From assembly GCA_002269645.1 (NCBI GenBank), contig NIVC01001463.1, positions 186,001 through 250,000 of the forward strand: 64,000 bases of DNA, given 5' to 3'. Origin of the DNA: Macrostomum lignano. Its lineage: Eukaryota. Below, one piece after another: positions 14,858 to 64,000 of the stretch (positions within the stretch are counted from its first letter, which is position 1; each line of letters begins with the position of its first letter). The position numbers and the translations under genes are program-made. The notes below the pieces were generated by a model. It searched no databases. It was not told where the DNA came from and worked only from the letters and a program-made list of their open reading frames with translations.

Positions 14858-14989
14858 GCGGATGCCTGAAGCAGTGACATGTTCTCGTCGTAAGATAGCG
14901 CGCCCGTGAGGAATGCTTTTACGCAAGCAAACACAACATCAAAGTTACTTCGATGCCCCCCCAATCGGCTAGCAAAGCATGTGGCGCCC

Positions 14990-23673: not shown

Positions 23674-26600
23674 TTACACGTACTTAAAGCACTTGACCTT
23701 GTCAGTGCCGAGTCGGGTCTTAAACAGCACCGAGTCAGCCCTGAACTGACTGTACAGCAGGGTGTTGTACCCGAACATGCCGCTGAAGTAGTTAATACAG
23801 TGCGACCGTTCAAAGAAATGCGAATCGTCTTTATAAAGCGACTGGGAACAGCCGAAGCAGGGAAACGTCCAGCGCGACGTCACTTTGATTGGCGCCTTGC
23901 GAGTCACGTGACTAACAAGAAAATTCATTAGGATGTCCTCGCAGTTTGTCAGCCGGTCGACTTCGGCGCGTAGAGCTGCGGGCAGCCAATATGAGTACAG
24001 GTGCAGGTAGTGGACGTGAAGAAATGCCGCTCCTGTGAGCACCATGGAGTATTCGCAGGTCTGGTTGGAATTGTACACCCAGCCGGAGCCCGATCGGGCG
24101 TGGAATCTGGCCGGGAAGCCGACGATGCGATCGCGGTGCTCGCGCCAGACTCGGAAGGCCAGCACCAGCTCGTCCTGGCGCATGTACACGTCATCGTCAA
24201 GGCTCAGCACAGCTTCGGTGCGAATCTGGGACCACGGCAGGAACCGGTTGTTGAGCGAGTTGCCTGCAGTGTGCGGAGGGGGTTGCAGCAAAACTGGTCA
24301 GGACTTTAAATCCACGCAAGAGTATTCGAGTGGGGTTTTCTCTTAGTCTCTGGGGGTGGGTTGGCCCAGCAACTGAGGATCTAAGAGGCTGGCCCAGCAA
24401 CTGACACTCTGGGAGGCTGGCCCAGCACCTGAGGATCTAAGAGGCTGGCCCAGCAACTGACACTCTGGGAGGCTGGCCCAGCACCTGAGGATCTAAGAGG
24501 CTGGCCCGCCATCATTCAGTCTCACCAGGCCCGCGAATAAAATGCAGCGGCACGCCGCCCAGATCCGGCCAGACAGTGCTGGGGTTGGGCGGCCGCTCGC
24601 CATTCCACACCACCAGCACCGAGTGCAGGTAGGGCAGGCCGGCCAGTTTAGACAGGGAGCCAACCAGCACCGACTCGCGATTATAGCTGAGCACAACCGC
24701 CGTGAACTGTTCGGCTGGCAGGTTGCCGCCCGCCGCCCGGCTAAATTCGACTCCGCCAGTGCCCATAGAATGATTGATGGGGCGATAGCCGTAGGCGGAA
24801 CCGTTGAATTGGGCGTCGGTTGGCGGCGGCAGCGGATGGCCCGGCAGGCTTGGATAGTTGAGCAGCGGGTTCGGCAGCTGGCTGATTGGCGCCGGGGCTG
24901 TGTAGTTGTGCTGCTCGGGGATTAAGGCGGAAGAGTTTAGGTAATGAAAAGACAAGTTTTATTAAGCGCTGAGGCCATTCTGCCCATTCCGCTGACTCCT
25001 GAGCACACACAAGCGCGCCAATACTGTACGCAGGCACGCACTCATGCACACGCTTACACAGGGTGTACAGCGGCCTGACATTCTAATCGTCAGGCATGTA
25101 CACTCTCTGTGCCTTGGGGGTTGGCCTTCATGGGTGTGAACCACACAACCTCCAAGCCAATGAATGCGGCCGCGCACGGAATCGAACCCGCGTCTTCCCC
25201 TATCTCTTCAGCCTCAACAGAGTAAGCTATGAGACAGCTATGGAGGATGGCTCACCTGAAACAGCACGGAGTCCAGAGGCGGCTCCACCGCGCCCAGGTA
25301 GTCCTGCGTCTCGTCGAAGTGGCTGGGCACGCGGCCCATGAGCAGGCGGGAATGCCCGGGCAGCAGGGCGCTGGAGCCTGTAGGCCCCACGGCTGCGGGA
25401 CCCGGCAAGCCCAGCCGCCTATTGAGCAGGGTGAGCAGAGTAGCAGCCTGGGCTCGCCAGGTGCCCAGATGCCGTTCGAGCAGCAGGCGGCCGTGTCGGC
25501 GCAACTCCAACAGCGCGGCGTCGCTGTACGTGGCCAGCAGCCAGGCCAGCTCGCTAGATCGGGACCTCGGCAGGCGGACAATGGCCCTACGCCACAGCGG
25601 CTCCAGTAGGTCACCGAACGGTGGCAGCATGTCGCCGAGGATTAGCGGCACTGAGCCGGCCAACAGGCAGTCCAGTAGGCGCCGCTGACCTCCCAGCGTG
25701 GATAGCGGTGCCCCGGCCGGCGCCAGAATCGGACAGAAGGTGGCGCCAGCCAGGGCGGGCAGCTCCACTTTGGACGTCAAGTTGTCGACAACGTCGCTAC
25801 GACAGAGTCGTTGAAGCTCGTCTAGCACTAAACGATCGACATCGCTAATCTGGCGCCACCAGCTGGAATTGGCGCCGGGCAAAAGCGGCGCCGTTAATAG
25901 GCGCGGCCTTCGCGCCGGCACCAATGGCGGCAGAGCGGCCCAGAGGTCGCTGGCCGATCGGAACGGCGCCTTAGCCGGCATGACAATGTCCCAGCCGGGC
26001 CGGTAGCTCCCGGACGGTTGGTAGCGCGAGGCCACAACAGCCCGAGGCCGCTCCGCTATCAGACCGCGCCTCAGCCGCTCGCTAGCAGCCGACGCCGGCA
26101 ACAACAGCATAGCAACCAGATTGGTCGCAGCAGGAACAGCCGACAGCGTCGACTTCGATGAAGACCCGACGTCAGCTAGCACCAGGCAGGAGTCGCGAAC
26201 AGCAACATTTGTTGACATGCCATCAGGCAGGAGGCGCCGACTGGAGTTCAACAGTCTGGCAGCATCAGTCAGCGAGTCTGTGGCCGAGTACAGCAGCGCG
26301 AATCTCGGCCGCTGGTCGGCCAGCCCGCACCGGGCATAGTCGAAGCAGTCAACTAGGCCGCAGTTGCCTTCGCTAGCCTTGTCCACCGCAGAAGCCGACT
26401 TCAGAGTCGAGATATTCAACGGCAGCCGCAGGACCGGCAGATTTCTTTGATCAGCCTCGGCTAAACGGATTTGCAAGGCGGCCAAATCCGATCGCGCCAT
26501 CTCCGTATCGGCGCTAATCTTGCGCTGATTTCGCATCAGATTAGCTAGCTCGATTCGGCTTGCCCGAATCTGTTGCATTATCTTGGTCCGCTCGCGCTCC

Positions 26601-26866
26601 ATCCGGACCAGCTCCTGCCTGACCGACGCCTTCACCCGGCGAAGATCGGCCAGGGCGGCTAGCGAGTCGGCGCAATTCCGACGGTGCAACCGCAGCGCCC
26701 GGCCAGACAGAGGCGGCGGCGTTGTTGGTGACGCTGTGGAGCTGCTGGAGACCGGCTGAGCGGCGCACCGGCTGCTGCAGTCGCCCAGCCAGACGGTGAG
26801 GGCGCACAGAGCAGCCAGCAAACCGGCTAGAGAGAGCAGACAGCCGAACTTGCGCCAGCAACGCAT
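23674..26866 (-). CDS. EXTL3: Exostosin-like 3 glycosyltransferase (heparan sulfate initiation)
   Basis: Exons 26866-25257, 24910-24526, 24263-23674. Type II TM anchor, coiled coil, degenerate GT47 region, GT64 domain ([38 protein letters not shown]) and terminal [12 protein letters not shown]...KCFKYV. Confidence 0.93.
24365..24510 (+). repeat. Intronic dimeric minisatellite (GAGGCTGGCCCAGCAACTGACACTCTGG / ...GCACCTGAGGATCTAA)
   Basis: Alternating ~28-29 bp units in EXTL3 intron 2. Confidence 0.8.
24962..25240 (-). mobile_element. tRNA-derived SINE, family A copy 2 (EXTL3 intron 1)
   Basis: B box (GGAATCGAACC on plus) at 25178-25188; body and tail (GTGTGCTCAGGAGTC.GCGGAATGGGCAGAAT) shared with the 48-kb copy. 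Confidence 0.75.
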
Positions 26867-49179: not shown

Positions 49180-52100
49180 ATGGCAGGACGTGGAGCTTGG
49201 AAATCTGCGAGCCCATCAAGTAGCAACGGGCTAATCCCGTCGCCTCCTGTGCCTCATCACCCAGCTTCCCAGCCAGTCGCGCTGGGTATAGAGACTAATG
49301 CCGCTATTAACACTGGTTTCAATGGCGGCCGTGCTGGCGCCACTGTGTCTAACGGAGCCGTTGCTAGCCCGCCAACTGGGCTTAATTCTACTACTGGATT
49401 TGGCGCTTCTATAGGCTTTGGCGGCAGCGGTGGCGGTGGCGGAGGCGGAGATAGTTCCGGAAGAAGACAAGGTTGCTTCAGGTGCAATGAAACCGGACAC
49501 ATAGCTAGAGATTGTCCCAACCAGCCTTCAGGAGGTGGCGGCAGAGGTGGAGGCGGAGGTGACGGCGCCTGCTACAGGTGCAATGAAACCGGACACATAG
49601 CTAGAGATTGTCCCAACCAGCCTTCAGGAGGTGGCGGCAGAGGTGGAGGCGGAGGTGACGGCGCCTGCTATAGGTGCAATGAAACCGGACACATAGCTAG
49701 AGATTGTCCCAACCAGCCTTCAGGAGGTGGCGGCAGAGGTGGAGGCGGAGGTGACGGCGCCTGCTACAGGTGCAAAGAAACCGGACACATAGCTAGAGAT
49801 TGTCCGAATGCATCAGCCGAAGTTTGCTACAAGTGCAACCAGCCCGGTCACATCGCGCGCGACTGTCCGACTCGCGTTGGTGCCGATGACGCTGCTGCCG
49901 GCGATCCCATAGTGCGGGAGACCTATATACCTACCGAACTCACAGTGGAAGCCATCGCTCGGATGTCGGTTAAGACTGGCGTTAATGCGCTTATCTTTGA
50001 CCAGATTGAGGTTCGTAAATCAGCTTGGCTGGGGGGGGGGGGTTGTAAGCGGCATGAACAATATGCAAGGCGGTTTGATTGCTACTAGGAGCGGAACCTA
50101 GGTAGAATTACCCATCTCCTTGTCAAAAGACCAGATGTGCAACCGACAGCTCAGCCGCAGCTATTGCGCGGCGCATCTGAAGGTACGGCTGTTCAGTCCA
50201 ATGACTGGGGGTCGCCACACACCATCAATTACCCCAGCTAATGCTGGCACCCATTTTACAGTTGGGTGAACTGAAGAAATGCAGAGTTAATGTCTTGCTC
50301 AAGGACACAAATTGTTCCAGTGGGATCGGGAATCGAACCCCCGACATTCAAGTTGTGAGTCCGACGCTCTAACCATTACGTTACAATCCCCTACCATAAA
50401 TTTAAAGGTTAAACATACCTGTAAAAGGTCATTCTTAGTTTTTACTTGGCTACTTAATAAAAAGTAGTATTAATTGTATTTAATATTCAATCTGCTGTCC
50501 GCATTTTACAGGTAGAACTGACCGGTAGCAATAAGCCGCCTCCAATTAAAACGCTGCAAGAGATTGGCGTGCCTGACTCCGTGCTGAAGGTGGTCACCGA
50601 TTCGTTTAAAATCAATAGGCTATTCCCTGTGCAGGCCTATGCTATACCCATTGTAGCGTCTGGCCGCGATCTGCTGGCCTGCGCTCAGACTGGCTCTGGC
50701 AAGACTCTGGCCTATCTACTGCCTATTATTAAAATGCTATTGGATACGCTCAGTACTGATAATACTGTCTTTAATGGAGTCTGCTATCCAACTTCGCTGA
50801 TTGTTGTGCCTACAAGGGAGCTGGCTACTCAGGTAAGAATTGTTGTTGTTGTCTTAGAAAGATTTGGAGGCTCAAAATAATTGATACTGACTCTCTTAGC
50901 TACTGTTAAGTGTAAAGTTAGCTAGGCTTCTGATATAGACCACAGACCAAACCTGTCCTGAAACTGTGTTTCATGTTGACAAAACAAGTTGCAACCTTTA
51001 GAAGGCGAAAACACGATTTGAAATTTTGCCAAAGAGACAGATATGAGGGTTGGCATCTATTCTAACTCATTTCATCATGGCATGCCAACGGCATAGTAAA
51101 ACAGCGACCGCAGACCTTTGATGCATTTGGTGTCCACTCTCTTGGTCGCACGCCAATGTTCGAGCATCACCGTGCGAACTGGGTGCCGCGTGAGCGGACG
51201 GTGGAGCCAATATCTGGAACGCTGACTTAGACAAACTGATTGAGCGCTATCAGAAATGCATCTCGTTAAATGGTGAATTTGTGAAGCAACATAAGCGACA
51301 GTAACAACGATTTGGGTAGCTGTGACTCGAAAATCGTGTTTTGTAACCGACATCAAGTGGTTTAAGATTGATCATAACTTTTGACGCATGTATGCATAGT
51401 GGCGATCTAGAGTTTCATTTTGGGGGGGGGGGCGGTCCAAGTTTGGGGCGCCAGCACGAGTATAAGGGCGCCAGCCAAACCAAAGCTAGGGGGCTCAAAA
51501 AATGCGTGTAGGGAAGCGAAAAATCAAGCTTAGGGCCGCAAAAAATGCGTGTAGGGGAGCGAAAAATCAAGCTAAGGGGCGCAAACTTAGTTTTTTTTGG
51601 GGGGGGGGCGCAATATGTTCTGTCAAGCTATTTTGGCCTTCCGCCCCTAAATCCGCCCCTGCAGAAGAAGACAAAGCCTGACAAGACGAAGGAAAAGAGA
51701 AGCCTGGAAACTTATTAAGTTGGTATTTGAAATATTGTGCTCTTGAAAACGGATGACTTGATACCAGGATTAGCTAATGCTGCAGATAATAAGTACAGCA
51801 ATTTTCTGTATAAAATTTGTGCTCTTATAATCTGACAAATACTGTATATACCCATCTTGCCAATCGCCAATTCTCAGGTGTACGACCAGTGCACCGTCTA
51901 TTTCAAGCCGGTCGGCCTAAAAGTACAGCGCATTCACGGCAGCATCCAGCACGCCCACCTAGTGAAATGCCTGCAGTCCGGCGCACACACCCTGGTTGCT
52001 ACAGTTGGCCGACTGAAAGATTTCATTAATCGCAATTTAGTTAGCCTAGCTAGAACTAAGCTTATTGTACTGGATGAAGCCGACCGGATGCTGGAACAGG

Positions 52101-54822
52101 GATTCCAAGAGGACGTTGTGGCCTTTATGCAATCGGCCGACCAGCGGCGCCAGGTGATCATGTTCTCCGCTACTTACCCGCACTCTGTGCAGACTCTAGC
52201 CGGCAGCTACCTGGCCCAGGACTACTTGTTTTTAAGCATCGGCCGGGTTGGCAAGCCCAGTCCCGACGTGACCCAGGAGGTGCGCGAAGTGTCTCAGGGC
52301 GACAAGGTCGCCACTTTGTTAGCTTTGCTAGCAGAATTTCGCGACCTAGAGCCTAACGGATTTGGCGAGCGAAAAGTTTTGGTGTTTGTCGAACGAAAGG
52401 AGACGGCCAACCTGATTGGCATGCTGCTGTGCGACAAGGGCTTTGAGGTGAGCCATTGAGCGGAGGGACACCTGTCACTCGCATGTCTGCTGTGTCTCTG
52501 CTTGTCTGTCACTCGCATGTCTGCTGTGTCTCTGCTTGTCTGTCACTCGCGTATCTACTGCGTCACTGCTTGTCTGTCACTCGCGTATCTACTGCGTCAC
52601 TGCTTGTCTGTCACTCGCGTATCTACTGTGTGTCTGCTTGTCTGTCACTCACATGTCCGCTGTGTCACTGCTTGTCTGTCACTCGCATGTCTACTGTGTC
52701 ATTGCTTGTCTGTCACTCGCGTATCTACTGCGTCACTGCTTGTCTGTCACTCGCGTATCTACTGTGTCTCTGCTTGTCTGTCACTCGCATGTCTACTGTG
52801 TCATTGCTTGTCTGTCACTCGCGTATCTACTGCGTCACTGCTTGTCTGTCACTCGCGTATCTACTGCGTCACTGCTTGTCTGTCACTCGCGTATCTACTG
52901 CGTCACTGCTTGTCTGTCACTCGCGTATCTACTGCGTCACTGCTTGTCTGTCACTCGCGTATCTACTGCGTCACTTCTTGTCTGTCACTCGCGTATCTAC
53001 TGTGTCTCTGCTTGTCTGTCACTCGCGTATCTACTGTGTGTCTGCTTGTCTGTCACTCACATGTCCGCTGTGTCACTGCTTGTCTGTCACTCGAATGTCT
53101 ACTGTGTGTCTGCTTGTTTACTGTAGTCTCAGATATACTAGAATAAGTTATTCTAGTATCTGTGGTTGTAGGTAAGGAAAGGGCCTGAGTCACAGCTTCA
53201 AATCATGACGAAAATTGATCCGCAGCCAGTGAAGAAGGCAAATCAGTCATATTTTTATGCCTATTTTTCTGACCATTGAGCACGCCATCAAGTCAGGGCT
53301 GCTGTGCACCCTGAGTCAGCGCGCGCGTGCTCAGGGGTCATCAGAATGGGTAATGACTGCTTGCGGCTGCAGTTTTCGACCAATTGTGAAGCTTCGATCC
53401 AGTATTGGAATTTAGGCGTTTATTAATATGATGATATCAGCCTCTATTTGGTTAATCTATGAGTGCACCTGTACTGATCGATTGCTTCGTATTCAACTAG
53501 GCCACCAATAATCACGGCGACCGGCCGCCAGCCGAGCGTCAGCGGGCCTTCTCCGAGTTCCGCAGCGGCACCACACCGGTGATGGTGACTACTAATATGA
53601 TGTCCCGCGGCATCGACATCTCAGGCATATCGCTGGTGATTAATTACGACTTGCCGCAGGATGACTCCAGCTATGTGCACAGGATTGGCCGGACTGGGCG
53701 CTGCGGCAATCTGGGCAGGTGAGGCTATCGTGAGCTTTGTTGCGCTAATCCACCAGCATAGCATCTGTTGCGCTAATCCACCAGCATAGCATCTGTTGCG
53801 CTAATCCACCAGCATCTGCTGTGCTAATCCACCAGCATCTGCTGTGCTAATCCACCAGCATCTGTTGCGCTAATCCACCAGCATCTGCTGTGCTAATCCA
53901 CCAGCATCTGTTGCGCTAATCCACCAGCATAGCATCTGTTGCGCTAATCCACCAGCATAGCATCTGTTGCGCTAATCCACCAGCATAGCATCTGTTGCGC
54001 TAATCCACCAGCATAGCATCTGCTGTGCTAATCCACCAGCATCTGCTGTGCTAATCCACCAGCATCTGTTGCGCTAATCCACCAGCATCTGCTGTGCTAA
54101 TCCACCAGCATCTGTTGCGCTAATCCACCAGCATAGCATCTGTTGCGCTAATCCACCAGCATAGCATCTGTTGCGCTAATCCACCAGCATAGCATCTGTT
54201 GCGCTAATCCACCAGCATAGCATCTGCTGTGCTAATCCACCAGCATCTGCTGTGCTAATCCACCAGCATCTGCTGTGCTAATCCACCAGCATCTGCTGTG
54301 CTAATCCACCAGCATCTGCTGTGCTAATCCACCAGCATCTGCTGCGCTAATCCACCAGCATAGCATCTGCTGTGCTAATCCACCAGCATCTGCTGCGCTA
54401 ATCCACCAGCATTCTTAAGCTCGATCTCACAGCCTTCCTAAGAGTAGTTCCAAGGCATTATTGAGTCAACTCCGCAACTATGTGTAACAAAATCCTCAAC
54501 GACACTATGTTAATCTCCATCCCCCAGATCCATCAGCTTCTTCGATCCCAACGCAGACGGGCCGTTAGCTCACCAGCTGGTCGGCAATCTCCGCAGTGCC
54601 CAACAGCCGGTGCCCGAATGGCTTGAGACAATCGCCGAACGCGAAGGCTGCTCGGGCAACGGCTACGGCGGCCGCGGCCGCGGACGCGGCGAGTATCGCG
54701 ACATTCGACGCGGCATCGGTCGCACCGTCGAAATCATCGACGACAGTTTCGGCCTGGGCGACGGCGGCGGAGCTTTCCAGCCAAGGCCGGCCGATGTGCC
54801 GAACGAGGACGACTGGTCGTGA
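49180..54822 (+). CDS. vasa: Vasa/DDX4-like DEAD-box helicase with five N-terminal CCHC zinc knuckles
   Basis: Exons 49180-50010, 50512-50832, 51878-52447, 53501-53718, 54528-54822 join in frame. [32 protein letters not shown], Gly/RG-rich N-terminus and acidic-Trp C-terminus EDDWS*. Confidence 0.88.
50090..50395 (-). mobile_element. CORE-SINE (tRNA head plus CORE domain) in vasa intron 1
   Basis: CCCATTTTACAG...GAACTGA...AGAGTTAATGTCTTGCTCAAGGACACA (50248-50310) resembles the reverse-strand MIR/CORE consensus; B box (GGAATCGAACC) at 50329-50339. Confidence 0.75.
51080..51390 (+). mobile_element. Tc1/mariner remnant (transposase C-terminus)
   Basis: [19 protein letters not shown] (51230-51290) matches the mariner C-terminal KL..R..KC...NG.Y motif. 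Confidence 0.6.
51397..51661. mobile_element. Degenerate MITE with (C/T)AGTGGCG(G)ATCTA...TAAATCCGCCCCTG termini
   Basis: Imperfect TIRs with internal G-runs; no TSD seen. Confidence 0.5.
52468..53115 (+). repeat. 34-bp minisatellite (TGCTTGTCTGTCACTCGCGTATCTACTGCGTCAC) in vasa intron 3
   Basis: About 19 units starting ~20 bp after the donor. Confidence 0.93.
53740..54412 (+). repeat. 23/28-bp minisatellite (GCTAATCCACCAGCA[TAGCA]TCTG(T/C)TG(C/T)) in vasa intron 4
   Basis: Mixed 23- and 28-bp units starting ~25 bp after the donor. Confidence 0.93.
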
Positions 54823-55324
54823 GCCAGACTGGGGCGCCTCTTGATCGTTAAGAGGACAGTGCAGTCCTGTTGATTCGGCTCATTAATCACTGGACTCATT
54901 TTCATAAAATTTGCCAATTTTTTTAGAAGTCGGAAAACAAACTTTGAACTGCTAGTAATAGCCATCCGTGTTCGGTTTCTCTTGTCGTTTCTTGTTTATT
55001 TTCGTGTATTTGCTTCATGGGTGCTGGTGTGTTAATTATATTTAGTCATATTTTTATAGTTTATAGTAATTATTAATAATAGGACATCAAATTTTGTTCT
55101 TCAACGCTTTTTTTCAAAACTTTATGCGTCATGTCTGGATTTTTAAATGTTGTTTTACGAAAATAGTTCATCTATTTCTCATTTGTAGCTAACATACTTT
55201 AGTTGTCTGGTATATGCCAGCGCGGTTAAACTTCCCAATTTCCGTATAAAAGTGTGACAGTCACATTTTGAATTTGTGATCTGTTTTGTGACCATCAAAA
55301 AATGGTATCAAATTTGACCCTCCA

Positions 55325-56030
55325 TTGTGACCCTCTGATGTGACCGTCAAATGAACGGTCTCTCATGTGACCCTCCAATGTGACCGTCAAATAAACGGTC
55401 TCTCTTGTGACCCTCCAATGTGACCGTCAAATAAACGGTCTCTCTTGTGACCCTCCAATGTGACCGTCCTATAAACGATCTCTCGTGAGACCCTCCAATG
55501 TGACCGTCAAATAAACGGTCTCTCATGTGACCCTCCAATGTGACCGTCAAATAAACGGTCTCTCATGTGACCCTCCAATGTGACCGTCAAATAAACGGTC
55601 TCTCATGTGACCCTCCAATGTGACCGTCAAATAAACGGTCTCTCATGTGACCCTCCAATGTGACCGTCCTATAAACGATCTCTCGTGAGACCCTCCAATG
55701 TGACCGTCAAATAAACGATCTCTCGTGAGACCCTCCAATGTGACCGTCAAATAAACGGTCTCTCATGTGACCCTCCAATGTGACCGTCAAATAAACGGTC
55801 TCTCTTGTGACCCTCCAATGTGACCGTCAAATAAACGGTCTCTCATGTGACCCTCCAATGTGACCGTCAAATAAACGGTCTCTCATGTGACCCTCCAATG
55901 TGACCGTCAAATAAACGGTCTCTCATGTGACCCTCCAATGTGACCGTCAAATAAACGGTCTCTCATGTGACCCTCCAATGTGACCGTCAAAGAAACGGCC
56001 GCTCATGTGACCGATCAATGTGACCCAAAA
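55325..56030 (+). repeat. 40-bp minisatellite (TGTGACCGTCAAATAAACGGTCTCTCATGTGACCCTCCAA), ~17 units, each with a 6-bp hairpin
   Basis: GACCGT/ACGGTC stem within each unit; flanked by TGTGAC-rich degenerate ends. Confidence 0.93.
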
Positions 56031-56659
56031 ATGTGACAAGCAGTGTTACATTTTGATGTGACAAGCAGTGACACATTTTTTACTGTCACTAAAAAATTGT
56101 GACCGTCCCACTTTTATGCGGGCTTGCCAAGCTTGAGAGCTTTGAAAAATCCAAATTCTGTGTTGTCAGCTTTTCCAACTTATTCGAATTTTCATCTAAT
56201 AAACACGATTCTCTGAGTAAAGGTACTATTAGTAGAATATTTAGCCACAAAGACTGGTCTCATTTATATCAGTTTTGCACCTCATTGGCTGGCTGGAAGT
56301 GCCTATAAAAAGCTAAGATTCCGTACGTAAAACACATTGTGTACCAGACTACTTATGAAAGCTTAAGCTGAAGTTTGCATTTTCTGTGCAGCATTTTTTC
56401 ACCCTCGCATGCGCGCTGTTTCTTATCTCAACAATATATATTATATGACATTTTGCTATCCGGTTCTGCAGATGGCAAAGGCCTGATTGAACATCTCTGA
56501 AGTAATACATTTCTTTATTTGGAATTGTTGTCTTAATCCTTTATTACTTTGTATGTACTTTCACCACTTGTACTCGTAGTTTATTGATCTATATCCAGTC
56601 GTTAGGGCCCACCAAGTCAGGTATATTCAAGCAGTTCCAATCTTTGAGTGTATCGCTAT

Positions 56660-56812
56660 TGAGTCTAATGTATCACTACTGAATCTAATGTATCAATATT
56701 TAGTCTAATGTATCACTACCGAGTCTAATGTATCACTACTGAGCCTAATGTATCAATATTGAGTCTAATGTATCACTACCGAGACTAATGTATCACTACT
56801 GAGTCTTATGTA
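56660..56812 (+). repeat. 20-bp minisatellite (GAGTCTAATGTATCACTACT), ~8 units
   Basis: Direct tandem copies just upstream of retroelement 1. Confidence 0.85.
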
Positions 56813-56996
56813 TTGCATCGGTTTGCGCGAGCCCGCGAGGGCTAACCGCTGTTAGTGCAAGGGGGGCTGTTTGGGTGCTGGCTGTATGGTGGGGTGGTGG
56901 GTGCGTTGTGCGTGCGCGTGCCTATTTAGGCCGCCACCTTTGTGGCTGCGCGGGGTTGCTAGCGGTTGAATTTTTTAATTTTTTTTTTGCTGAATC

Positions 56997-58088
56997 ATGG
57001 CAGATAGCCTTGTACTGCCCGCAACTAACAAAGCGCTACGAGAAGCCCTTAGTGAGCGCGGCCTGCCTACTAATGGCAATAAGCAAGAGCTAACAAGTCG
57101 TCTAAAACTCAGCATTGCCAAGGAGCTTGAGCGGCAGGCGTTGGAGCAGGACAGAGGCTCATCTCGTCGTGCTCAAGATGACAAGACATCACCGACGAAT
57201 GCGGGCGCACCCGAGCTAAGTCTGGCTCCACCTGAGGACGAGATGCTACCGGCGGTGGGCGCCTTGGCCGAGGGTCGGGCGGCGACGGGAGGCGGTCTCG
57301 AGGATCAGCTGCGAGAGACTGAACTGCGCATTCGGCTGCTGGACCTGAAAAAAAGAGAGGCTCAGCTCGAAGCCGAGCTCGCTGAAGCGCGTCACAGTGG
57401 CACGGCGGCTGCGAGAGAACGTGATCAGACTCCCGGTGAGTGGCATGATTTGGTTGGCGAGTGTATACTCGGGCAGGCTGGGGCTGCAATTTCGCATGCT
57501 CAGGCGCCGGCGGTGTACAGAGTCGTTGATTTTATCAGTGAGCGTAAGCGGAGACAAGGAAGCCAGTCTGTTGTGGGAGCGGCAAAGCCAGAGAGGTTGA
57601 AACACGTCAGTCCCGAGTCACTGTCGTTTGGCGATTTCATCTCCGGTAGCTGTAACTTACTGGTGCAAATGCTGCGTGATGGCAAACTGCTGCACATTGT
57701 TGATGGCAGAATCGATTCATCCGAGTTGATCGATCATCTCCGACATAACGCTAGAATTGGTGACCTGCTAGATTTAGGCTTCGATCGCATTAAAGTCATG
57801 AGATATGATGACGAATGTCGGCTTCTCCAGCATGATGGAACGCGGTGGAGCGCTGTTAGCGCAGACCTGGGTCTGGTGGCAACACACTTGATGGCACCGA
57901 CAAAAATGATAAATGCAACAGCGCCTAGAAAGCGAACGCAGCCACCTGTCTGTTTCGACTTCAACAGTCTTAGCGGCTGCAACAGAACTCACTGCCGCTT
58001 CGCCCATCAGTGCCGCAGGTGCTCACAGCCGCACTCTGAAGCCCGAGCCCACGCTGATGGGGACCCGGGCCAACTTTCAAAAAACTAG
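56997..58088 (+). CDS. Element 1 Gag-like ORF1: SAP domain, coiled coil, C-terminal CCCH/CCHH zinc fingers
   Basis: NKALREALSERGLPTNGNKQELTSRL (SAP pattern L+..L..RGL...G.K..L..RL); CFDFNSLSGCNRTHCRFAHQCRRCSQPH. Confidence 0.85.
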   Translation: MADSLVLPATNKALREALSERGLPTNGNKQELTSRLKLSIAKELERQALEQDRGSSRRAQDDKTSPTNAGAPELSLAPPEDEMLPAVGALAEGRAATGGGLEDQLRETELRIRLLDLKKREAQLEAELAEARHSGTAAARERDQTPGEWHDLVGECILGQAGAAISHAQAPAVYRVVDFISERKRRQGSQSVVGAAKPERLKHVSPESLSFGDFISGSCNLLVQMLRDGKLLHIVDGRIDSSELIDHLRHNARIGDLLDLGFDRIKVMRYDDECRLLQHDGTRWSAVSADLGLVATHLMAPTKMINATAPRKRTQPPVCFDFNSLSGCNRTHCRFAHQCRRCSQPHSEARAHADGDPGQLSKN

Positions 58089-59971
58089 CGTGCGAGGTGG
58101 GGGCACAGGACTCAATGTCTGCCGCCGGGTCACCCTCCTGTGCCCCCACGGGGGAGCTCTGACCCGAGTTCAACTGAGTTGTCGAGCGACCTTGTGTTTG
58201 CGGTTTGGCGGGAAGAGCTGGCTGGGACCGAGATGCCGGAGGACCGTGTCAGGTTTGTGCTCGATGGTGTGAAGAATGGCTTTCGAATTACTAATAAAGT
58301 TATGGATTGTAAGAACCACACTGAGATGGCAAATCACAGATCAGCTACCATTCACCAGCAAGCTGTTGAGGCCCAGGTGCGCCAGGAGCTCAAGCAGGAC
58401 CGCTACAGGCGCTGCCAGACAGGCAACCGGCCGCTCATCGTTAGTGCACTTGGTGCGATCCCTAAGGCGGATTCGTCTTCCATCCGCCTTATTCACGACT
58501 GCAGCCTGCCAACTGGCGCCTCTGTGAATGATTTCTTTGAGTCGAAACGGAAGTTGCGTTTTACTTCGGCCAGCAACTTTGCCTCGAAGCTGTACAGCGG
58601 CGCGTACATGTGCAAAGTGGATCTGTCGCAAGCATATCGTTCATGTGGTGTGCACCCTGATGACCACCGGGTCACAGGCATGAAGATTCAGCTCCAAGGC
58701 GAGGGCCAGCCAGTGTACCTGTACGACACGTTTGGTGCTTCGGCTTCCGTATTCTGCTTTTACGAGCTGAGCCAAGCTGTGCGTTTTATGATGTTGAAGC
58801 ATGGTTTCTACGCTATGGAGGCCTACATGGATGACTTCGCCTTTTGTGGAGATCTGGAGTCCTGCTGGAAGTTCTACAACCTTCTCATCGATCTGCTCGA
58901 GCGGCTAGGCTTCACCGTAGCAAGTGTGTTCCGCCGACAACGCGGATGACCTTTCTGGGCATTTTATTTGATAGCGTGGCAGGCCAGATGTCTCTTCCTG
59001 CCGAAAAAGTCCAAGACTTGTTGCATGTTTTATCCCTCTGCTCTTCGAAGAAAAGGCTGTCAAAGTCGTGTTTGCAGAAGTTGATCGGCAAGTTAAACTG
59101 GGCGTCGCAAGTTGTTCGGCACGGGAGAGTTTTCCTCCGACCTCTTATCGACATTGTTAACAAGCTGCATCGGCCTCATGACAGGGTTCTTGTTAGTCCC
59201 TCCGTGGTGCACCAACTCTCCTGGTGGCGGTTGGCTTTGCAACATCGCATCGGTGTTGACCTGTGGACTTCGCCGAGGGCTTGTGTTGCCATAGAGACTG
59301 ACTCGTCGTCTTCAGGCGCCGCGGCGGTGCTCCGTGATGGTGATGGGATTCGTGATTGGTGCTTTATTGACTGGCAGATCGACGCAAATGGTGTTTTTCA
59401 GAATTACTGCATCAATTACAAGGAGGCTGTGGTTATATTGCTGGCTGTTTTGAGATGGGGCCAATCCTTGGCTGGTTGTCGGCTTGCTGTGTACTGCGAC
59501 AATGAGACGGCGTGTTGGATTCTAAGGCGAGGTGTCTCCAAGGACTCGCGTCTGATGTGGTTGCTGCAGTCTGTGGCGTTGCTCTGTCTGCGTTTTGACG
59601 TTGAATTTGAGGTCTTTCACGTTCCTGGTGCCTATCAGCTGTTTGCTGATGCAGGGTCCCGCCTGCACTCGCGTCATGAGTTGCTTAACTTTATTTTCCG
59701 TGTTTACGGGTCTGTGCCAGTTTGTCCTGTGGAGTTTTCGAATCACGCGTTTTCTGTTTTTGCCTCCCGTTTTTTATTTTCACAGGCCGCCTCCCTGCAA
59801 CGCCGACCCTCGGCGCCGCCGCCTCCAGCCTCCTCGCCGCAGCATACGCACCGCAGTCACGCAGGGCGATCTCATCGGCCGTCCGGTCCTGGCACAGCTT
59901 CTGCAACGAGAACGGGACCAACCCGGCTCGATCCGACCGGTCGGTGCTACTCAACTACCTGGCTCACCTAG
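58089..59971 (+). pseudogene. Element 1 reverse transcriptase + RNase H with a frameshift near 58920 and an apparent 3-codon loss in the LPFG motif
   Basis: RLIHDCS, KVDLSQAYR, YDT-FGASAS (vs DTRLPFGARAS in element 2), YMDD, LIGKLNWA; RNase H IETDSS, INYKEA, YCDN and ADAGSR lie in a different frame. Confidence 0.85.
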
Positions 59972-60657
59972 TCGAATGCCGCCTGAGATCGTTCAACAGT
60001 CTGCGTGTCCATGTCAGTGCACTGTCCAGCTGGTTCAAAGCCTGTGGTGCTGAGGACCTAACAAAACACCACCTGGTCTCACTGCTCGTTCGCGGCGCTA
60101 AACGGAGGATGGGCCAGCGACCAAGACGGAAGCTGCCGATTTCGCCTGCGATGCTGCTGTCTGTGAAAAACCGGCCTAACTCGAGCAGTTCGCTTGACAG
60201 AGTCTGCTGGCTTGTGACGCTTATTGCTTGGTGGGGGATGTTTCGGCGCTCCAGTCTCCTGCCCAGTCAGCAGTCCGCTTCACCGATCTCCGTCTCAGCC
60301 TTTCAACGCCACCCGAAGGGGGTTGTGCTCTCTGTCAGTTATGGCAAGACGAATCAGTTCGGCGCGAAGCTGCACCGGGTGTTGCTTCCAAGGCTAAAAG
60401 ATGGACATCCGCTTTGCCCAGTGGCTGCGCTAGAGGGTCACCTCCGTGTCAGCAAGCTTGGCTGCAGGCAGCCTGTGTTCTCCTACCAGTTGGCGAGCGG
60501 ATCCTCTGTTGTCCTGTCTGCCTCAAGATTCGACAAGTACCTCAAGCGCTGCCTAGCAACTGCTGAGCAGGACGCTCGTTCTTTCTCAGCGCACAGCCTG
60601 CGCAGAGGTGGTGCCACCTGGGCCTACCGTCTCGGACTATCTGTTTGTGATAAATAG
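59786..60657 (+). CDS. Element 1 tyrosine recombinase; no ATG of its own; truncated after the H-x-x-R motif
   Basis: N-terminal helical domain (YAPQSRRAISSAVRSWHSFC), MFRRSSL, YGKTNQ, CPVAAL and AHSLRRGGATW; the catalytic Tyr region is missing. Confidence 0.88.
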
Positions 60658-61073
60658 GCAATTAGATAATAGCATGCACGGTAAGCAATTATTTAGGCCC
60701 TAGACAAACCTACTTGGAGCGTTCGGAGATTTTAAAGCTATTAATCCTAATCGCCTATCGCCGGTCGGCGAGTTCTACCAGTCTTCTCCAATAGCCGCAG
60801 GTACAGTACAAGAAAATAAAGAACACGAGGGAACACAACCGAAAGATTTAGAGAGTGATAATGCCTCCATTTCTCTTAGGCTCTTTTGTGAGCCTGGAGT
60901 GAAATGGGTGTTAGCCATCCACCCCTCGCGCTGTACTTTGTGCCGCCTTTGTGCTCCGTCCTCTCTACCCCCCGTGGGGTGGGGGGGGGGTTTGCTCACC
61001 CGCTTATTTATTTGCACGCCGCCCTCTGTGCCCCGTCGCTCGCTTTGGCTTTGCAGCTCAAAATTTTACCATT

Positions 61074-62138
61074 ATGGAAAGTGCACGCAATTTTACAACT
61101 AAACAGCTCAAACAAGAGCTAGCTCAGCGAGGCCTCTCACAAGCTGGTCGTAAACAACAACTCTATGAGCGTCTACACAGACACCTGCGTGCTATGTCTG
61201 AGTATCCAGCTGCAGCAAAAAGTGACGACGCAAGCCTCAACTCAGACACCATCGACGGTGGACATTCGACGGGTGGACACGGAGCTTCAGGGAGCGCGGC
61301 GAGCGACCTGGCGGCTCTGAGGAAGGAGGTCGAGCAGCTGGAGATTGAAGCCCTGACTCGGCGCCGCGCACAACTGCAAAGCGAGCTCAATCAGTCGCAG
61401 AACCACCGGTCTCAGGAACCCCCACAACAAGGTGAGCGGAGAGAAAATGCTGGCTTGCATGAGGCGTTTTTGTTAGGCGGCGCTCTTACAGATCCCGGCA
61501 GAAGCCAGTGTGACAAAAAGACTAGCAGGGCTTATCTGATTCGCGATTTTGTCAAGCCCAGTTCAAATCAACCTAATGAGAGCCTCACAGCCTGCATGGA
61601 GAACGGGAACCTGGTCTTTAAGAAGCAGCCACCCAGCTTGGGGAAAATCTCTGTCGGCCAGTGGATTGCAGGGAACTCTAAGATTTTGCTTCGACTAGTT
61701 GATGATGGGTCGCTGATTCACATTAATGAGGATGGATCTGTCAATGTTGACGAACTAAAAGGCTATCTGGAGTACTCACAGAAGATCGGCGAGCTCTTAG
61801 ACGCTAACTACAGCCCAAGTGTCGTGTGGGAATTCGATGAGGATTACAGAAAGTTGATCGCCGACTCGGATTCGCATCGATGGGGCTGCGAGCCTCCACA
61901 GCTGTACCACCGACACCTTAACGCACCAAGAAGCTTAAAAGTCACCCTAAGCAGACCAGCATCCAACCAGTCGCAAGCTCCCATCTGCCTAAGCTACAAC
62001 TCCCCTGCCGGCTGCCAGCGGTCCTCCTGTAGGTACCGTCACGTCTGCAAGCTGCGCGACTGCGGCCGGCCGCACCCCGCACACCAGCACCGTCCGGCCA
62101 GCGTCGGCGGCGACGCTGTGGAGGGAGCAAAAAACTAG
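61074..62138 (+). CDS. Element 2 Gag-like ORF1 (SAP, coiled coil, zinc fingers)
   Basis: MESARNFTTKQLKQELAQRGLSQAGRKQQLYERL; CLSYNSPAGCQRSSCRYRHVCKLRDCGRPHPAHQH. Confidence 0.87.
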   Translation: MESARNFTTKQLKQELAQRGLSQAGRKQQLYERLHRHLRAMSEYPAAAKSDDASLNSDTIDGGHSTGGHGASGSAASDLAALRKEVEQLEIEALTRRRAQLQSELNQSQNHRSQEPPQQGERRENAGLHEAFLLGGALTDPGRSQCDKKTSRAYLIRDFVKPSSNQPNESLTACMENGNLVFKKQPPSLGKISVGQWIAGNSKILLRLVDDGSLIHINEDGSVNVDELKGYLEYSQKIGELLDANYSPSVVWEFDEDYRKLIADSDSHRWGCEPPQLYHRHLNAPRSLKVTLSRPASNQSQAPICLSYNSPAGCQRSSCRYRHVCKLRDCGRPHPAHQHRPASVGGDAVEGAKN

Positions 62139-63895
62139 ATCTTTTTTATAGCCGCCCTGCTTTTAACCCCCGTTCGCCTTTACCTTTTATCTTGCCTCCA
62201 TCTGCTCATTGCCCTGCTCGCACCCTGCTCTCTCCACCGCGCCGCGCTCTGTCGTCCGACATGAACCTTGCCGCCTGGGAGCCGCTGCTTCTGGGTGACC
62301 AAGACGAAGATTTTCTTCGCAGCGGCCTTAGCTACGGCTTTCGGCTCATCAATAGATCGCCGCCTTTTCTTGCCCGCTCCGCCAACTACCGATCGGCCTT
62401 GGACCAAGCCAAGCAGGTTGGTGAACAGCTCGCCAAGGAGCTCCGTCTCGGCCGCTTGCAGCTCGCCAATGGCCCTGTCATGGTGAACGCCATCGGGGCG
62501 ATTCCAAAATCTGACGGCAGTGTCCGGGTCATTCATGACCTTTCTAGACCTTCGGGGTCCTCCGTCAACGACAGCTATGAGCAGGAAAAGGGGCTGCGCT
62601 TCGCCTCTGTCCAAGACCTGACCCGCTATCTTCGCCCAAACTCGTTTATCGGCAAAATCGACCTCAAGCAGGCCTATCGTTCCGTCGGTATTCACCCTGA
62701 CGACCAGGTGCTCACGGGCCTCAGCTGGCGGTTCTCTGCCGACAGCGATGACTCGGTGCTCGTTGACACTCGGTTGCCCTTTGGTGCTCGAGCGTCATGT
62801 GAGATTTTCCATCGCTTATCGGCCTGCATCAAGCGCCACATGTTCAGCATTGGCTTCACAGCTACCGTCAACTACTTGGACGACTGGGCAGTCGCCGGTG
62901 ATACTGAAGAAGCGGCTCAGGAGGCCTTCAATTATCTGGTTGATCTGCTGCAGAACTTAGGCTTCGACATCAACTGGCAGAAGACCGTGGCTCCAGCTCA
63001 ACACGTTGTGTTTCTCGGCGTGCTGGTTGACACTGTGAACGGCACCCTGTCACTTCCAAGCAACAAGAAAGACGACATTCGGAAACTGCTGAACGATTGC
63101 CTGTCATGTGACGTTGTTAAACTGAAGCAGCTCGAAAAACTGGCCGGTAAGTTGTGCTGGCTCAGCCAGATCAACAGGCTGTTGCGTCCTTTCCTGCGCC
63201 CGCTCTTCGACATCCTCAGCTGCAGAATGGACACCCGGCTGCCATCTGAGCTTCGCAACCTCTTCCTCTGGTGGCTGCGCGTCGTGAGTTCTCTGCCGCC
63301 GACGGTCATTCGCCCCCGTTTTCGTCAACTTGTGGCCATCGAATCTGATAGCAGTTGCGAGGGTGCTGCTGGCATCGTCTTTGGCAGCGAATTCAGTGAC
63401 TGGACGTACTTCAGCTGGGAGAAGGACTTTGAGAGCAAGTTCCGCGACCTTCACATCAACCACAAGGAGGCGCTGGCTCCGCTGCTTACCATCCTGCGCT
63501 TCCGCGAGCAGCTTAGGAACAGCCGCGTGGTGATTTACTCGGACAGCACTGCTGCCGTCGGCATGGTCAATAAGCTTTCCTGTCGGCATCCTCTGCTCAT
63601 TCGCATCTATCAGACCGTTGCTCTCGTGTGCCTCACGTCGGGAATTCAGCTCCAGGCGTTCCACCTTCCTGGCCAGATGCAGCTGCTGAGCGACTCCGCT
63701 TCTAGAATGGGGGGCTCGAGCAGAGAGCTCATTAATTTTTGCTGCCGTCTTTACGGCTCTTTATGCATTTGTCCTTTCGAATTTGCTTCCCACACCATTT
63801 CTGCCGTGTCTCGCACCGCTCTTCATTCGCAGGTCGCAGCCGCGCTCCGCTCCGCTCCACCGTGTCTGTGTCCGCTCTGTGCCGCCTGTCACTAG
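62129..63895 (+). CDS. Element 2 reverse transcriptase + RNase H (ORF2), open from the A-AAA-AAC heptamer in the -1 frame of gag
   Basis: RVIHDLS, KIDLKQAYR, RLPFGARAS, YLDD, LAGKLCWL; RNase H IESDSS, INHKEA, YSDS and SDSASR; no stop between 62129 and 63893. Confidence 0.9.
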   Translation, partial: KKLDLFYSRPAFNPRSPLPFILPPSAHCPARTLLSPPRRALSSDMNLAAWEPLLLGDQDEDFLRSGLSYGFRLINRSPPFLARSANYRSALDQAKQVGEQLAKELRLGRLQLANGPVMVNAIGAIPKSDGSVRVIHDLSRPSGSSVNDSYEQEKGLRFASVQDLTRYLRPNSFIGKIDLKQAYRSVGIHPDDQVLTGLSWRFSADSDDSVLVDTRLPFGARASCEIFHRLSACIKRHMFSIGFTATVNYLDDWAVAGDTEEAAQEAFNYLVDLLQNLGFDINWQKTVAPAQHVVFLGVLVDTVNGTLSLPSNKKDDIRKLLNDCLSCDVVKLKQLEKLAGKLCWLSQINRLLRPFLRPLFDILSCRMDTRLPSELRNLFLWWLRVVSSLPPTVIRPRFRQLVAIESDSSCEGAAGIVFGSEFSDWTYFSWEKDFESKFRDLHINHKEALAPLLTILRFREQLRNSRVVIYSDSTAAVGMVNKLSCRHPLLIRIYQTVALVCLTSGIQLQAFHLPGQMQLLSDSASRMGGSSRELINFCCRLYGSLCICPFEFASHTISAVSRTALHSQVAAALRSAPPCLCPLCAACH

Positions 63896-64000
63896 CGCCT
63901 AGTTCCAGGAAGTCCTATGCGAGCCGCTTACAAGTCTGGAACGAATTCTGCCGGCAGCGTCGAGTTCCCGCGACCGCCGCCTCCGAGTCTGATGTCTGCC
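63833..64000 (+). CDS. Element 2 tyrosine recombinase, N-terminal part (truncated by the window)
   Basis: GRSRAPLRSTVSVSALCRLSLAPSSRKSYASRLQVWNEFCRQR aligns with element 1 YAPQSRRAISSAVRSWHSFC. Confidence 0.75.

What the first reader, a model, noticed from the sequence alone, without database searches (positions are those of the whole stretch)
58077..62140. Identical A-AAA-AAC-TAG recoding signal ends Gag in both elements
Seen: element 1 gag ends TCA AAA AAC TAG (heptamer 58079-58085) and element 2 ends GCA AAA AAC TAG (62129-62135), although the flanking sequences are unrelated. In element 2 the -1 frame from the heptamer is open for 1.77 kb straight into RT/RNase H, and its first ATG falls only at the start of the recognisable conserved region (D-M-N-L-A-A-W). 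Established: A-AAA-AAC is a canonical X-XXY-YYZ -1 frameshift site (MMTV and HTLV gag-pro). Inference: these YR retrotransposons make Gag-Pol by programmed -1 frameshifting at a slippery site abutting the stop codon. Element 2 shows no obvious downstream stimulator (pyrimidine-rich), so slow termination might act as the stimulator.
Basis: partly seen in the sequence, partly recalled or inferred. Interest (0 to 1): 0.78.

Follow-up and report, generated by a model that had tools for sequence, protein, structure and literature searches.

The report
Gag-pol frameshift signal in Ngaro-like retrotransposons
Two adjacent tyrosine-recombinase retrotransposons end gag with the same A-AAA-AAC-TAG; about 70 relatives show the heptamer is a conserved -1 frameshift site that makes Gag-Pol in element 2, while element 1 has pol in frame behind the stop and more likely needs readthrough - a standard retroelement mechanism that I found no description of for this family.

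Summary
AAAAAACTAG occurs twice in the window, and each copy ends a SAP + CCCH-knuckle Gag ORF in X_XXY_YYZ phase.

Pol is in the -1 frame, open 62033-63895, and there is no downstream RNA structure. In 73 related gag-pol junctions plus the window's two elements, 33 have pol in -1. Of those, 25 carry A_AAA_AA[C/T] in gag phase inside the overlap. Only 1 of 40 other junctions does, and that one is element 1. Codon choice is fixed (NNA-AAA-AAC), and 26/33 have no AUG from which pol could start.

The stop lies 0-12 codons after the heptamer. Adjacency is therefore incidental, and termination is not a general stimulator.

Element 1 does not fit. Its -1 frame closes after 25 codons. Pol continues in frame 0 behind UAG-C, an 8-nt spacer and a 14-bp stem. 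That points to readthrough, or to a damaged copy; no close relative was found to decide.

The wider family also has in-frame leaky-stop members (UGA/UAG, never UAA) and a +1 clade with a conserved CGT-TTT-CGT.

Verdict: a known mechanism, and a new member of a known kind.

The parts
56997..58088 (+). Element 1 gag ORF (363 aa; SAP domain, coiled coil, CCCH knuckle), ending ...LSKN-TAG
58079..58085 (+). Element 1 heptamer A_AAA_AAC in gag phase. The -1 frame from here closes at TGA 58160.
58086..58088 (+). Element 1 gag stop TAG, followed by C. Pol continues in the same frame.
58097..58149 (+). Element 1 stem-loop. 14 bp (GTGGGGGCACAGGA / TCCTGTGCCCCCAC) with a 25-nt loop (58111-58135). It starts 8 nt after TAG and 11 nt after the heptamer. 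A possible 7-bp second stem pairs 58126-58132 with 58160-58166 (shuffle p about 0.06).
58089..58946 (+). Element 1 pol N-terminal part (linker + RT) in frame 0. Homology to the -1-frame pol of L001 and element 2 starts at LPPGHP, nt 58119.
58910..58925 (+). Element 1 disabling indel inside RT (frame 0 to frame 2, between ...LGFTV and SKCVPP...)
58835..59971 (+). Element 1 RT C-terminal part + RNase H (frame 2)
59689..60657 (+). Element 1 tyrosine-recombinase ORF (frame 1). It ends just after the HSLRRGGAT box, so the catalytic Tyr region is missing and the element is 3'-truncated.
61074..62138 (+). Element 2 gag ORF from the first ATG (354 aa; the ORF is open from 60951), ending ...EGAKN-TAG
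62129..62135 (+). Element 2 heptamer A_AAA_AAC, the proposed -1 shift site. It is the only in-phase X_XXY_YYZ in the 106-nt overlap.
62136..62138 (+). Element 2 gag stop TAG, followed by A
62033..63895 (+). Element 2 pol ORF (linker + RT + RNase H) in the -1 frame. The conserved part starts at LSSDMNLAAW, about 62249.
63736..64000 (+). Element 2 start of the tyrosine-recombinase frame (-1 relative to pol). It runs off the window.

Best explanation
Both elements are Ngaro-like tyrosine-recombinase retrotransposons (gag, then RT/RNase H, then YR) of one clade. They inherited the 10-mer NCA-AAA-AAC-TAG from a common ancestor.

In element 2 the heptamer A_AAA_AAC is a -1 programmed ribosomal frameshift site. 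A minority of ribosomes decoding Lys-Asn slip back one base. They then read CUA-GAU... in the -1 frame and continue for 1.77 kb, which gives a Gag-RT-RNase H fusion. The rest terminate at the adjacent UAG and give Gag. No RNA structure assists in element 2, so the efficiency is probably low (inferred, not shown). The abutting stop is a feature of this clade, not a requirement.

Element 1 keeps the heptamer, but in this copy slippage leads only to a 25-codon dead end. Its pol lies in frame with gag behind UAG-C, an 8-nt spacer and a 14-bp GC-rich stem-loop. That layout is the one used for stop-codon readthrough. I judge it about 60% likely that the element-1 lineage switched from frameshifting to readthrough, and about 35-40% likely that this already damaged copy simply carries an indel.

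Shown: sequence, frames, conservation, structure predictions. Inferred: that ribosomes actually shift or read through, and at what rate.
For: Frames and stops.

Element 2 has a single in-phase heptamer in the overlap.

The nearest relative, L001, has the identical TCA AAA AAC TAG with pol in -1. It has a strong stem starting 8 nt after the heptamer (z -3.9).

Survey of 75 junctions: 33 are -1, 32 are in-frame once element 1 is refiled, and 9 are +1.
- In-phase A_AAA_AA[C/T] near the gag end: 25/33 of the -1 class against 1/40 of the others (Fisher p 1e-11).
- Among the 26 A6N heptamers: AAAAAAC 23, AAAAAAT 1, AAAAAAG 1, AAAAAAA 1. The preceding codon is always NNA.
- If only the peptide x-K-N were conserved, NNA-AAA-AAC would be expected in 7% of cases. 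The probability of 23 or more out of 26 is 7e-24.
- Four loci have overlaps of 28 nt or less that still contain the heptamer.
- 26/33 have no ATG in the pol frame before the conserved region.

A_AAA_AAC is among the most shift-prone heptamers on mammalian ribosomes (review PMC5009743).

Element 1: frame-0 homology to the -1-frame linker of L001 starts at nt 58119 (E 3e-11). The stem is at the 0.3rd percentile of stability within the element and starts 8 nt after UAG. UAG is followed by C, whereas the other loci whose stop abuts the heptamer have A or G. Switches between -1 and in-frame occurred elsewhere in the tree, with bootstrap 97% and 85%.
Against: There is no experimental measurement of frameshifting or readthrough.

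Element 2 and many -1 relatives lack any downstream stimulator (median stability percentile 0.53). That is unusual for efficient -1 frameshifting.

The statistics treat loci as independent, although they share ancestry.

Eight of the 33 -1 loci lack the A6 heptamer. One of them has G_GGA_AAC, some look degraded, and some are unexplained.

Element 1 is a dead copy (RT indel, 3' truncation), so a further indel in its spacer cannot be excluded. No close relative was found to settle it.

The in-frame relatives mostly lack a stem like element 1's. The stem is therefore not a family hallmark of readthrough.
Confidence: 0.8

Rival explanations
1. One reading: both elements make Gag-Pol by -1 frameshifting at the heptamer. 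Element 1's in-frame arrangement is then a mutation or assembly error in this one decayed copy, that is, a 1-nt insertion or 2-nt deletion in the spacer.
For: Element 1 retains the exact heptamer + TAG of its -1 relatives. It is demonstrably damaged elsewhere (RT indel near 58918, 3' truncation). It is the only in-frame locus that keeps the in-phase A_AAA_AA[C/T] heptamer. A stem-loop downstream of a heptamer is also what a frameshift site would have (L001).
Against: Frame-0 homology to relatives' pol linker reaches back to 58119. The indel would therefore have to lie in 58089-58118, and 14 of those 30 nt are a perfectly paired stem arm. That leaves roughly 16 nt out of about 3.6 kb of coding sequence that shows only one other indel. 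The stem starts 11 nt from the heptamer, outside the usual 5-9 nt, but 8 nt from the stop. The base after the stop is C, the leaky context, unlike its relatives.
Confidence: 0.35
2. The shift is made at the RNA level. Polymerase or reverse-transcriptase stuttering on the A6 run adds one A, which puts pol in frame on a fraction of transcripts.
For: An A6 run is present in all cases. One inserted A would give the same frame change (reasoning from the sequence).
Against: The base after the run is C in 23 of 26 loci, and the run is always in X_XXY_YYZ phase with gag. Stuttering needs neither; tandem tRNA slippage needs both. A run of six A is short for appreciable slippage by cellular polymerases (established knowledge).
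Confidence: 0.03
3. Pol is translated on its own: from the ATG at 62261, from an internal entry site, or from a spliced or subgenomic mRNA. The heptamer is then irrelevant.
For: Element 2 does have an ATG exactly where the conserved region starts. The YR gene of these elements does seem to use a splice acceptor, so these elements may use splicing for another gene.
Against: That Met is not conserved; element 1 has Leu there. 26/33 relatives with pol in -1 have no ATG at all before the conserved region. Acceptor-like motifs at the gag-pol junction are not clearly enriched (5/33 against 6% in controls). This model does not explain the phase-locked heptamer.
Confidence: 0.05
4. Coincidence or a protein motif: K-N is simply a conserved Gag C-terminus and has no recoding role.
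For: The Gags are homologous, so a shared tail could be inherited.
Against: Homologous Gags of in-frame and +1 relatives lack it (1/31 and 0/9). Synonymous codons are not used. The residues around K-N are not conserved.
Confidence: 0.01

Closest known systems
Retroviral / LTR-retrotransposon gag-pro and gag-pol -1 frameshift sites using A_AAA_AAC
   Same: The heptamer is the same and is in the same phase. It lies at the 3' end of gag, a few codons or fewer before the gag stop. Pol overlaps in -1, and the purpose is a fixed Gag:Gag-Pol ratio. The heptamer is listed among the most shift-prone in the review read.
   Different: The host element is a tyrosine-recombinase retrotransposon with no protease or DDE integrase. 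Element 2 and many relatives show no downstream stem-loop or pseudoknot. The Gag has a SAP domain and a CCCH knuckle rather than CCHC.
Gammaretrovirus-type gag-pol UAG readthrough (from my own knowledge: in-frame UAG, about 8-nt spacer, pseudoknot)
   Same: Element 1 has an in-frame UAG between gag and pol, and an 8-nt spacer followed by a very stable 14-bp stem.
   Different: A pseudoknot is not established (7-bp second stem, p about 0.06). The heptamer is still present upstream. The copy is defective, and no relative confirms the layout. The in-frame relatives mostly use UGA-C/CUN without structure.
Ngaro retrotransposons (YR retrotransposons without a methyltransferase)
   Same: The gene order is gag, RT/RNase H, YR, with no room for a methyltransferase.
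   Different: [quoted passage not shown] They describe frame differences only for the YR ORF (PMC3783388). Split direct repeats could not be found here.
Plant luteovirus / dianthovirus -1 frameshift sites where the stop codon directly follows the heptamer (from my own knowledge, not checked here)
   Same: A 0-frame stop abuts the slippery heptamer, as in element 2, L001, L013, L032, L033 and L042.
   Different: The heptamers are different. Those viruses rely on strong local and long-range RNA structures. Here adjacency is not conserved.
Influenza A PA-X type +1 frameshift cassette, UCC_UUU_CGU as quoted in PMC5009743; also reported there for some bee viruses and Amalgaviridae
   Same: The +1 clade of this retrotransposon family (not in the window) conserves CGT-TTT-CGT 2-6 codons before the gag stop. 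It therefore has the same UUU_CGU core, with pol in +1.
   Different: The codon before UUU is CGU, not UCC. The host is a retrotransposon. The role is gag-pol fusion. None of this has been tested.

Membership tests
-1 programmed ribosomal frameshift site (tandem-slippage type) | X_XXY_YYZ heptamer in the phase of the upstream ORF | tested here: met
   A_AAA_AAC is in gag phase at 58079 and at 62129.
-1 programmed ribosomal frameshift site (tandem-slippage type) | The downstream gene is in the -1 frame and open across the heptamer | tested here: met
   Element 2: the -1 frame is open 62033-63895. Element 1 fails this test: the -1 frame stops at 58160 and pol is in frame 0.
-1 programmed ribosomal frameshift site (tandem-slippage type) | Stimulatory RNA structure 5-9 nt downstream | tested here: not met
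   Element 2: MFE -6.2 kcal/mol, z +2.0, percentile 1.0. Element 1: the stem starts 11 nt downstream. L001: the stem starts 8 nt downstream, z -3.9. The family median percentile is 0.53.
-1 programmed ribosomal frameshift site (tandem-slippage type) | Heptamer conserved at nucleotide level in relatives that share the frame arrangement | tested here: met
   25/33 against 1/40. Codon-level p is 7e-24.
-1 programmed ribosomal frameshift site (tandem-slippage type) | Measured frameshift product | not testable with these tools
   This needs a reporter assay, proteomics or ribosome profiling.
Stop-codon readthrough signal (element 1) | A single in-frame UAG/UGA between gag and pol, with a leaky 3' context | tested here: met
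   TAG at 58086 is followed by C, and frame 0 is open to 58947. In the in-frame relatives the stops are 21 UGA, 9 UAG and 0 UAA (Fisher p 4e-4 against the -1 class).
Stop-codon readthrough signal (element 1) | Downstream structure at about 8 nt, of pseudoknot type | tested here: inconclusive
   A 14-bp stem is present 8 nt after the stop. The candidate second stem is only marginally above chance (p 0.056).
Stop-codon readthrough signal (element 1) | Arrangement shared by other copies or close relatives | tested here: inconclusive
   No close relative was retrievable. The best hit is 58% identical and lies on a 596-nt contig.
Ngaro-type YR retrotransposon | Gene order gag, RT, RNase H, YR, without a methyltransferase | tested here: met
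   Pfam finds RVT_1 and RT_RNaseH. The YR ORF follows directly.
Ngaro-type YR retrotransposon | Tyrosine recombinase domain | tested here: inconclusive
   Only sub-threshold Pfam matches to Phage_integrase and SAM-like domains (E 0.016-0.22). An HxLRRGGAT box is visible. The catalytic Tyr region is missing from truncated element 1 and lies off-window for element 2.
Ngaro-type YR retrotransposon | Split direct terminal repeats | tested here: inconclusive
   No such repeats were found in 54000-64000. However, element 1 is truncated and element 2 runs off the window.

The most novel reading that the evidence does not exclude
One retrotransposon family moves repeatedly between all three classical recoding routes for Gag-Pol, each with its own conserved signal: -1 slippage at A_AAA_AAC, readthrough of UGA-C/UAG, and +1 slippage at a UUU_CGU core like that of influenza PA-X. 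Element 1 would be a caught-in-the-act intermediate. It still carries the ancestral slippery heptamer but has already moved pol into frame behind a leaky UAG with a new stem-loop. The 10-mer A_AAA_AAC_UAG would then be a pivot from which a single-base indel converts one mode into the other.
Probability: 0.35. Interest if true: 0.65.

Novelty: new member of a known kind. Interest (0 to 1): 0.5.

Why it matters
How tyrosine-recombinase retrotransposons set their Gag:Pol ratio has not been worked out. The open literature I could search mentions no recoding signal for Ngaro or DIRS elements, and a major recoding review does not mention them.

A phase-locked heptamer conserved across lineages that share only about 35% pol identity gives annotators a precise rule for joining gag and pol in these elements. 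It also offers a set of natural, apparently unstimulated A_AAA_AAC sites for studying basal frameshifting.

The side-by-side use of -1, 0 and +1 solutions in one family is a compact system for studying how recoding modes interconvert.

The mechanism itself is textbook, so the advance is one of scope rather than principle.

Tried and rejected
1. 'Element 2's -1 arrangement is an indel artefact.' Frame 0 is also open for 41 codons after its TAG. I rejected this because the nearest relative L001 and 25 further loci share the heptamer plus the -1 layout.

2. Looking for closer relatives or other copies of element 1. The third protein search gave nothing closer than 58% identity, on a 596-nt contig. 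The window's own proteins are absent from the protein collection (no 100% hits).

3. Nucleotide alignments across junctions (EL1/EL2/L001, and L042/L056/L060) were too divergent to place indels.

4. A general downstream stimulatory structure. There is none in the -1 class or in the in-frame class.

5. C-rich tracts downstream as a protein-binding stimulator. I considered this and dropped it. They coincide with Pro-rich linker codons and a P-L-N motif that the in-frame relatives also have.

6. T_TTT_TTA at 59770 as a second slip site for YR. I rejected this in favour of a polypyrimidine tract + CAG|G acceptor-like motif. Relatives conserve the acceptor-like motif, not a heptamer.

7. Splicing as the route to pol. 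Acceptor-like motifs are not clearly enriched at gag-pol junctions.

8. My first survey misfiled element 1 as '+1' because of a wrong-frame query of my own. I corrected this by hand.

Full report
**What is in the window**

The region 56997-64000 holds two retroelements in the same orientation.

Element 1 consists of:
- a gag ORF at 56997-58088;
- RT in frame 0 up to about 58918, where an indel shifts the reading to frame 2;
- RNase H, ending at 59971;
- a tyrosine-recombinase (YR) ORF at 59689-60657.

The YR ORF stops right after its HxLRRGGAT box, before the catalytic Tyr region. Element 1 is therefore 3'-truncated as well as frameshifted.

Element 2 starts about 400 nt further on. Its gag ATG is at 61074 and its gag stop at 62136-62138. 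Its RT/RNase H ORF is intact at 62033-63895, and its YR frame runs off the window.

Pfam finds SAP in both Gags, and RVT_1 and RT_RNaseH in pol. The order gag, RT/RH, YR with no methyltransferase is the Ngaro layout. The closest Gag homologues in the protein collection are from the flatworm Macrostomum lignano (54-55% identity).

**Checking the observation**

AAAAAACTAG occurs exactly twice in the window, at 58079-58088 and 62129-62138. Shuffles give a mean of 0.36. Each copy forms the last two sense codons plus the stop of a Gag ORF, with the heptamer in X_XXY_YYZ phase.

- the -1 frame is open from 62033 to 63895;
- the only ATG before the conserved region is at 62261;
- the downstream RNA is unstructured (MFE -6.2 kcal/mol against -11.1 for shuffles).

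The flanks are 'unrelated' only as DNA. The two Gags align over their whole length (26% identity, E 2e-28) and share the SAP domain, a coiled coil and a C-x8-C-x5-C-x3-H knuckle.

In element 1 the frames do not fit a -1 shift. After the heptamer, the -1 frame runs 25 codons into TGA at 58160. Frame 0 is open from the TAG to 58947 and encodes the pol N-terminus.

This frame-0 peptide aligns with the -1-frame linker and pol of the nearest relative from LPPG[HR]P onward, which is nt 58119 (E 3e-11).

**Relatives**

Protein searches with pol, look-ups of encoding contigs and one metagenome scan with a pol profile gave 87 loci. In 73 of them a CCCH-knuckle gag could be found upstream of pol. Together with the window's two elements, that makes 75 junctions.

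The junctions fall into three classes: 33 with pol in -1, 32 with pol in frame behind a single stop (after refiling element 1, which my script had misplaced), and 9 with pol in +1.

*The -1 class*

- 25 of the 33 loci have A_AAA_AA[C/T] in gag phase within the last 150 nt of gag. Only 1 of 40 loci in the other classes does, and that one is element 1 (Fisher p 1e-11).
- The A6N heptamers found in the overlap are AAAAAAC in 23 loci, and AAAAAAT, AAAAAAG and AAAAAAA in one locus each. The preceding codon always ends in A.
- From the codon usage of the same gag genes, a merely conserved x-K-N peptide would read NNA-AAA-AAC only 7% of the time. The probability of 23 or more out of 26 is 7e-24. This ignores shared ancestry, but the loci are only about 35% identical in pol.
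- In four loci the gag/pol overlap is 28 nt or less and still contains the heptamer.
- 26 of the 33 loci have no ATG in the pol frame before the conserved region. The ATG in element 2 is therefore an accident of that copy; element 1 has Leu at that position.
- L001, the closest pol relative (40% identity), has exactly TCA AAA AAC TAG with pol in -1.

The review read lists A_AAA_AAC among the most shift-prone heptamers on mammalian ribosomes.

*The stop codon and stimulators*

The gag stop follows the heptamer after 0 codons in 7 loci, 1 codon in 3, 2 in 7, 3 in 2, 4 in 2, 5 in 3, and 7 and 12 codons in one locus each. Direct adjacency is thus one variant among many, which speaks against termination as the general stimulator.

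Folding 73 nt downstream of each heptamer gives no overall excess of stability relative to windows from the same locus (median percentile 0.53). A few loci do have a hairpin a few nt after the heptamer (L001, L028, L032, L041).

Acceptor-like splice motifs are not clearly enriched at gag-pol junctions. Transcriptional stuttering on A6 would not require the fixed C at position 7 or the fixed phase.

My reading is unstimulated, or variably stimulated, low-level tandem slippage.

**Element 1**

Element 1 is the only in-frame locus that keeps the in-phase A_AAA_AA[C/T] heptamer. Its TAG is followed by C; the other loci where the stop abuts the heptamer have A or G there.

Exactly 8 nt after the TAG a perfect 14-bp GC-rich stem begins (58097-58110 pairing with 58136-58149). 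The fold has an MFE of -34.4 kcal/mol and is at the 0.3rd percentile within the element. A 7-bp loop-to-downstream pairing that would make it a pseudoknot is only marginal (p 0.056).

To restore a -1 layout, an indel would have to lie in 58089-58118, outside the perfectly paired arm. That is about 16 nt. Elsewhere the element shows one indel in about 3.6 kb.

Against this, the copy is dead, and no relative close enough to decide was found.

Switches between -1 and in-frame layouts did happen elsewhere in the family:
- L042 (-1) groups with L056 and L060 (in-frame) at 97% bootstrap;
- L047 (in-frame) sits among L030, L054 and L079 (-1) at 85% bootstrap.

I rate a genuine switch to readthrough at about 60%, and a private indel at 35-40%.

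**The wider family**

- In-frame members use UGA (21 loci) or UAG (9 loci) and never UAA. By contrast, 11 of the 33 gag stops in the -1 class are UAA (p 4e-4).
- 16 of the 21 UGA stops are followed by C, and ten of them read UGA-CUN.
- The +1 members form one clade. Six of its seven members conserve CCN-CCN-CGT-TTT-CGT a few codons before the gag stop. This shares the UUU_CGU core of the influenza A minimal +1 cassette as quoted in PMC5009743.

**Literature**

- No paper in the searchable library combines Ngaro with ribosomal frameshifting.
- Frame differences are discussed only for the YR ORF.
- The 2016 recoding review does not mention DIRS or Ngaro.
- Subscription-only papers, including the original Ngaro descriptions, could not be checked.

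**Verdict**

The mechanism is classical and the heptamer is the textbook one. What appears to be new is its documentation as a conserved, phase-locked signal in this retrotransposon family. Also new are the coexistence of three recoding modes in the family and a possible transitional element in this window.

Noticed in passing
L016, L023, L025, L029, L031, L045 (gag ends; e.g. L016 about 1270-1296); also the tail PPRFRQY of protein P0003: A clade of relatives has pol in the +1 frame and conserves CCN-CCN-CGT-TTT-CGT (peptide PPRFR) 2-6 codons before the gag stop. Both Arg codons are always CGT. The UUU_CGU core equals that of the influenza A +1 cassette quoted in PMC5009743, which suggests a +1 shift site.
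   Followed up: partly
L003-L006, L014, L018, L021, L036, L038, L063 and other in-frame loci (gag stops listed): About 30 relatives have gag and pol in one frame, separated by a single UGA (21 loci) or UAG (9 loci) and never UAA. 16 of the 21 UGA stops are followed by C, often as UGA-CUN. These look like leaky-stop readthrough junctions, mostly without downstream structure.
   Followed up: partly
window 59750-59786 and 63815-63833; 30 of 42 related loci: There is a polypyrimidine tract followed by CAG|G just upstream of where YR homology begins. This acceptor-like motif is present in 71% of relatives against 8% of control windows. The YR frame overlaps pol in -1 or +1, usually without a slippery heptamer and often without an ATG. 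YR may be made from a spliced mRNA. The T_TTT_TTA at 59770 lies inside this tract. No splice donor was looked for.
   Followed up: partly
window 58910-58925 and 60640-61074: Element 1 is defective. It has an indel in RT, and its YR ORF ends before the catalytic Tyr region. Element 2, a 26%-identical family member, begins about 400 nt downstream in the same orientation. This may be an insertion of one element into or next to the other.
   Followed up: partly
window 56649-56813; also 52472-53117, 53738-54412, 55326-56025: Several tandem arrays lie just upstream of element 1: 20 nt x 8 (about 180 nt before the gag ATG), 34 nt x 19, 23 nt x 26 and 40 nt x 17.5. Whether the 20-nt array belongs to the element's 5' region is unknown.
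   Followed up: no
window 4502-5521 (+), 25238-26866 (-), 49180-50088 (+): Host-type ORFs: an FAP206 (cilia/flagella-associated) domain, an exostosin GT47 domain, and a protein with five CCHC zinc knuckles. Together with the Macrostomum lignano best hits for Gag, this points to an animal genome, possibly a flatworm.
   Followed up: no
window 14906-17593: This is a 2.6-kb stretch of about 60% GC with long ORFs open in several frames on both strands and no Pfam match. It is probably a low-complexity or repeat region.
   Followed up: no
protein P0018 (UniRef, Macrostomum lignano): A gene model named long-chain-fatty-acid--CoA ligase matches element 2 pol at 48% identity over 56% of the query. This is probably a retrotransposon fragment merged into a host gene model.
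   Followed up: no
L069 about 1307-1319; L075 and L076 gag ends: These are -1 relatives without the A6 heptamer. L069 has a 13-nt overlap reading CCT-TTT-TAG, so a single-tRNA slip on U_UUU next to the stop is possible. L075 and L076 read G_GAA_AAC. Their shift sites remain unexplained.
   Followed up: no
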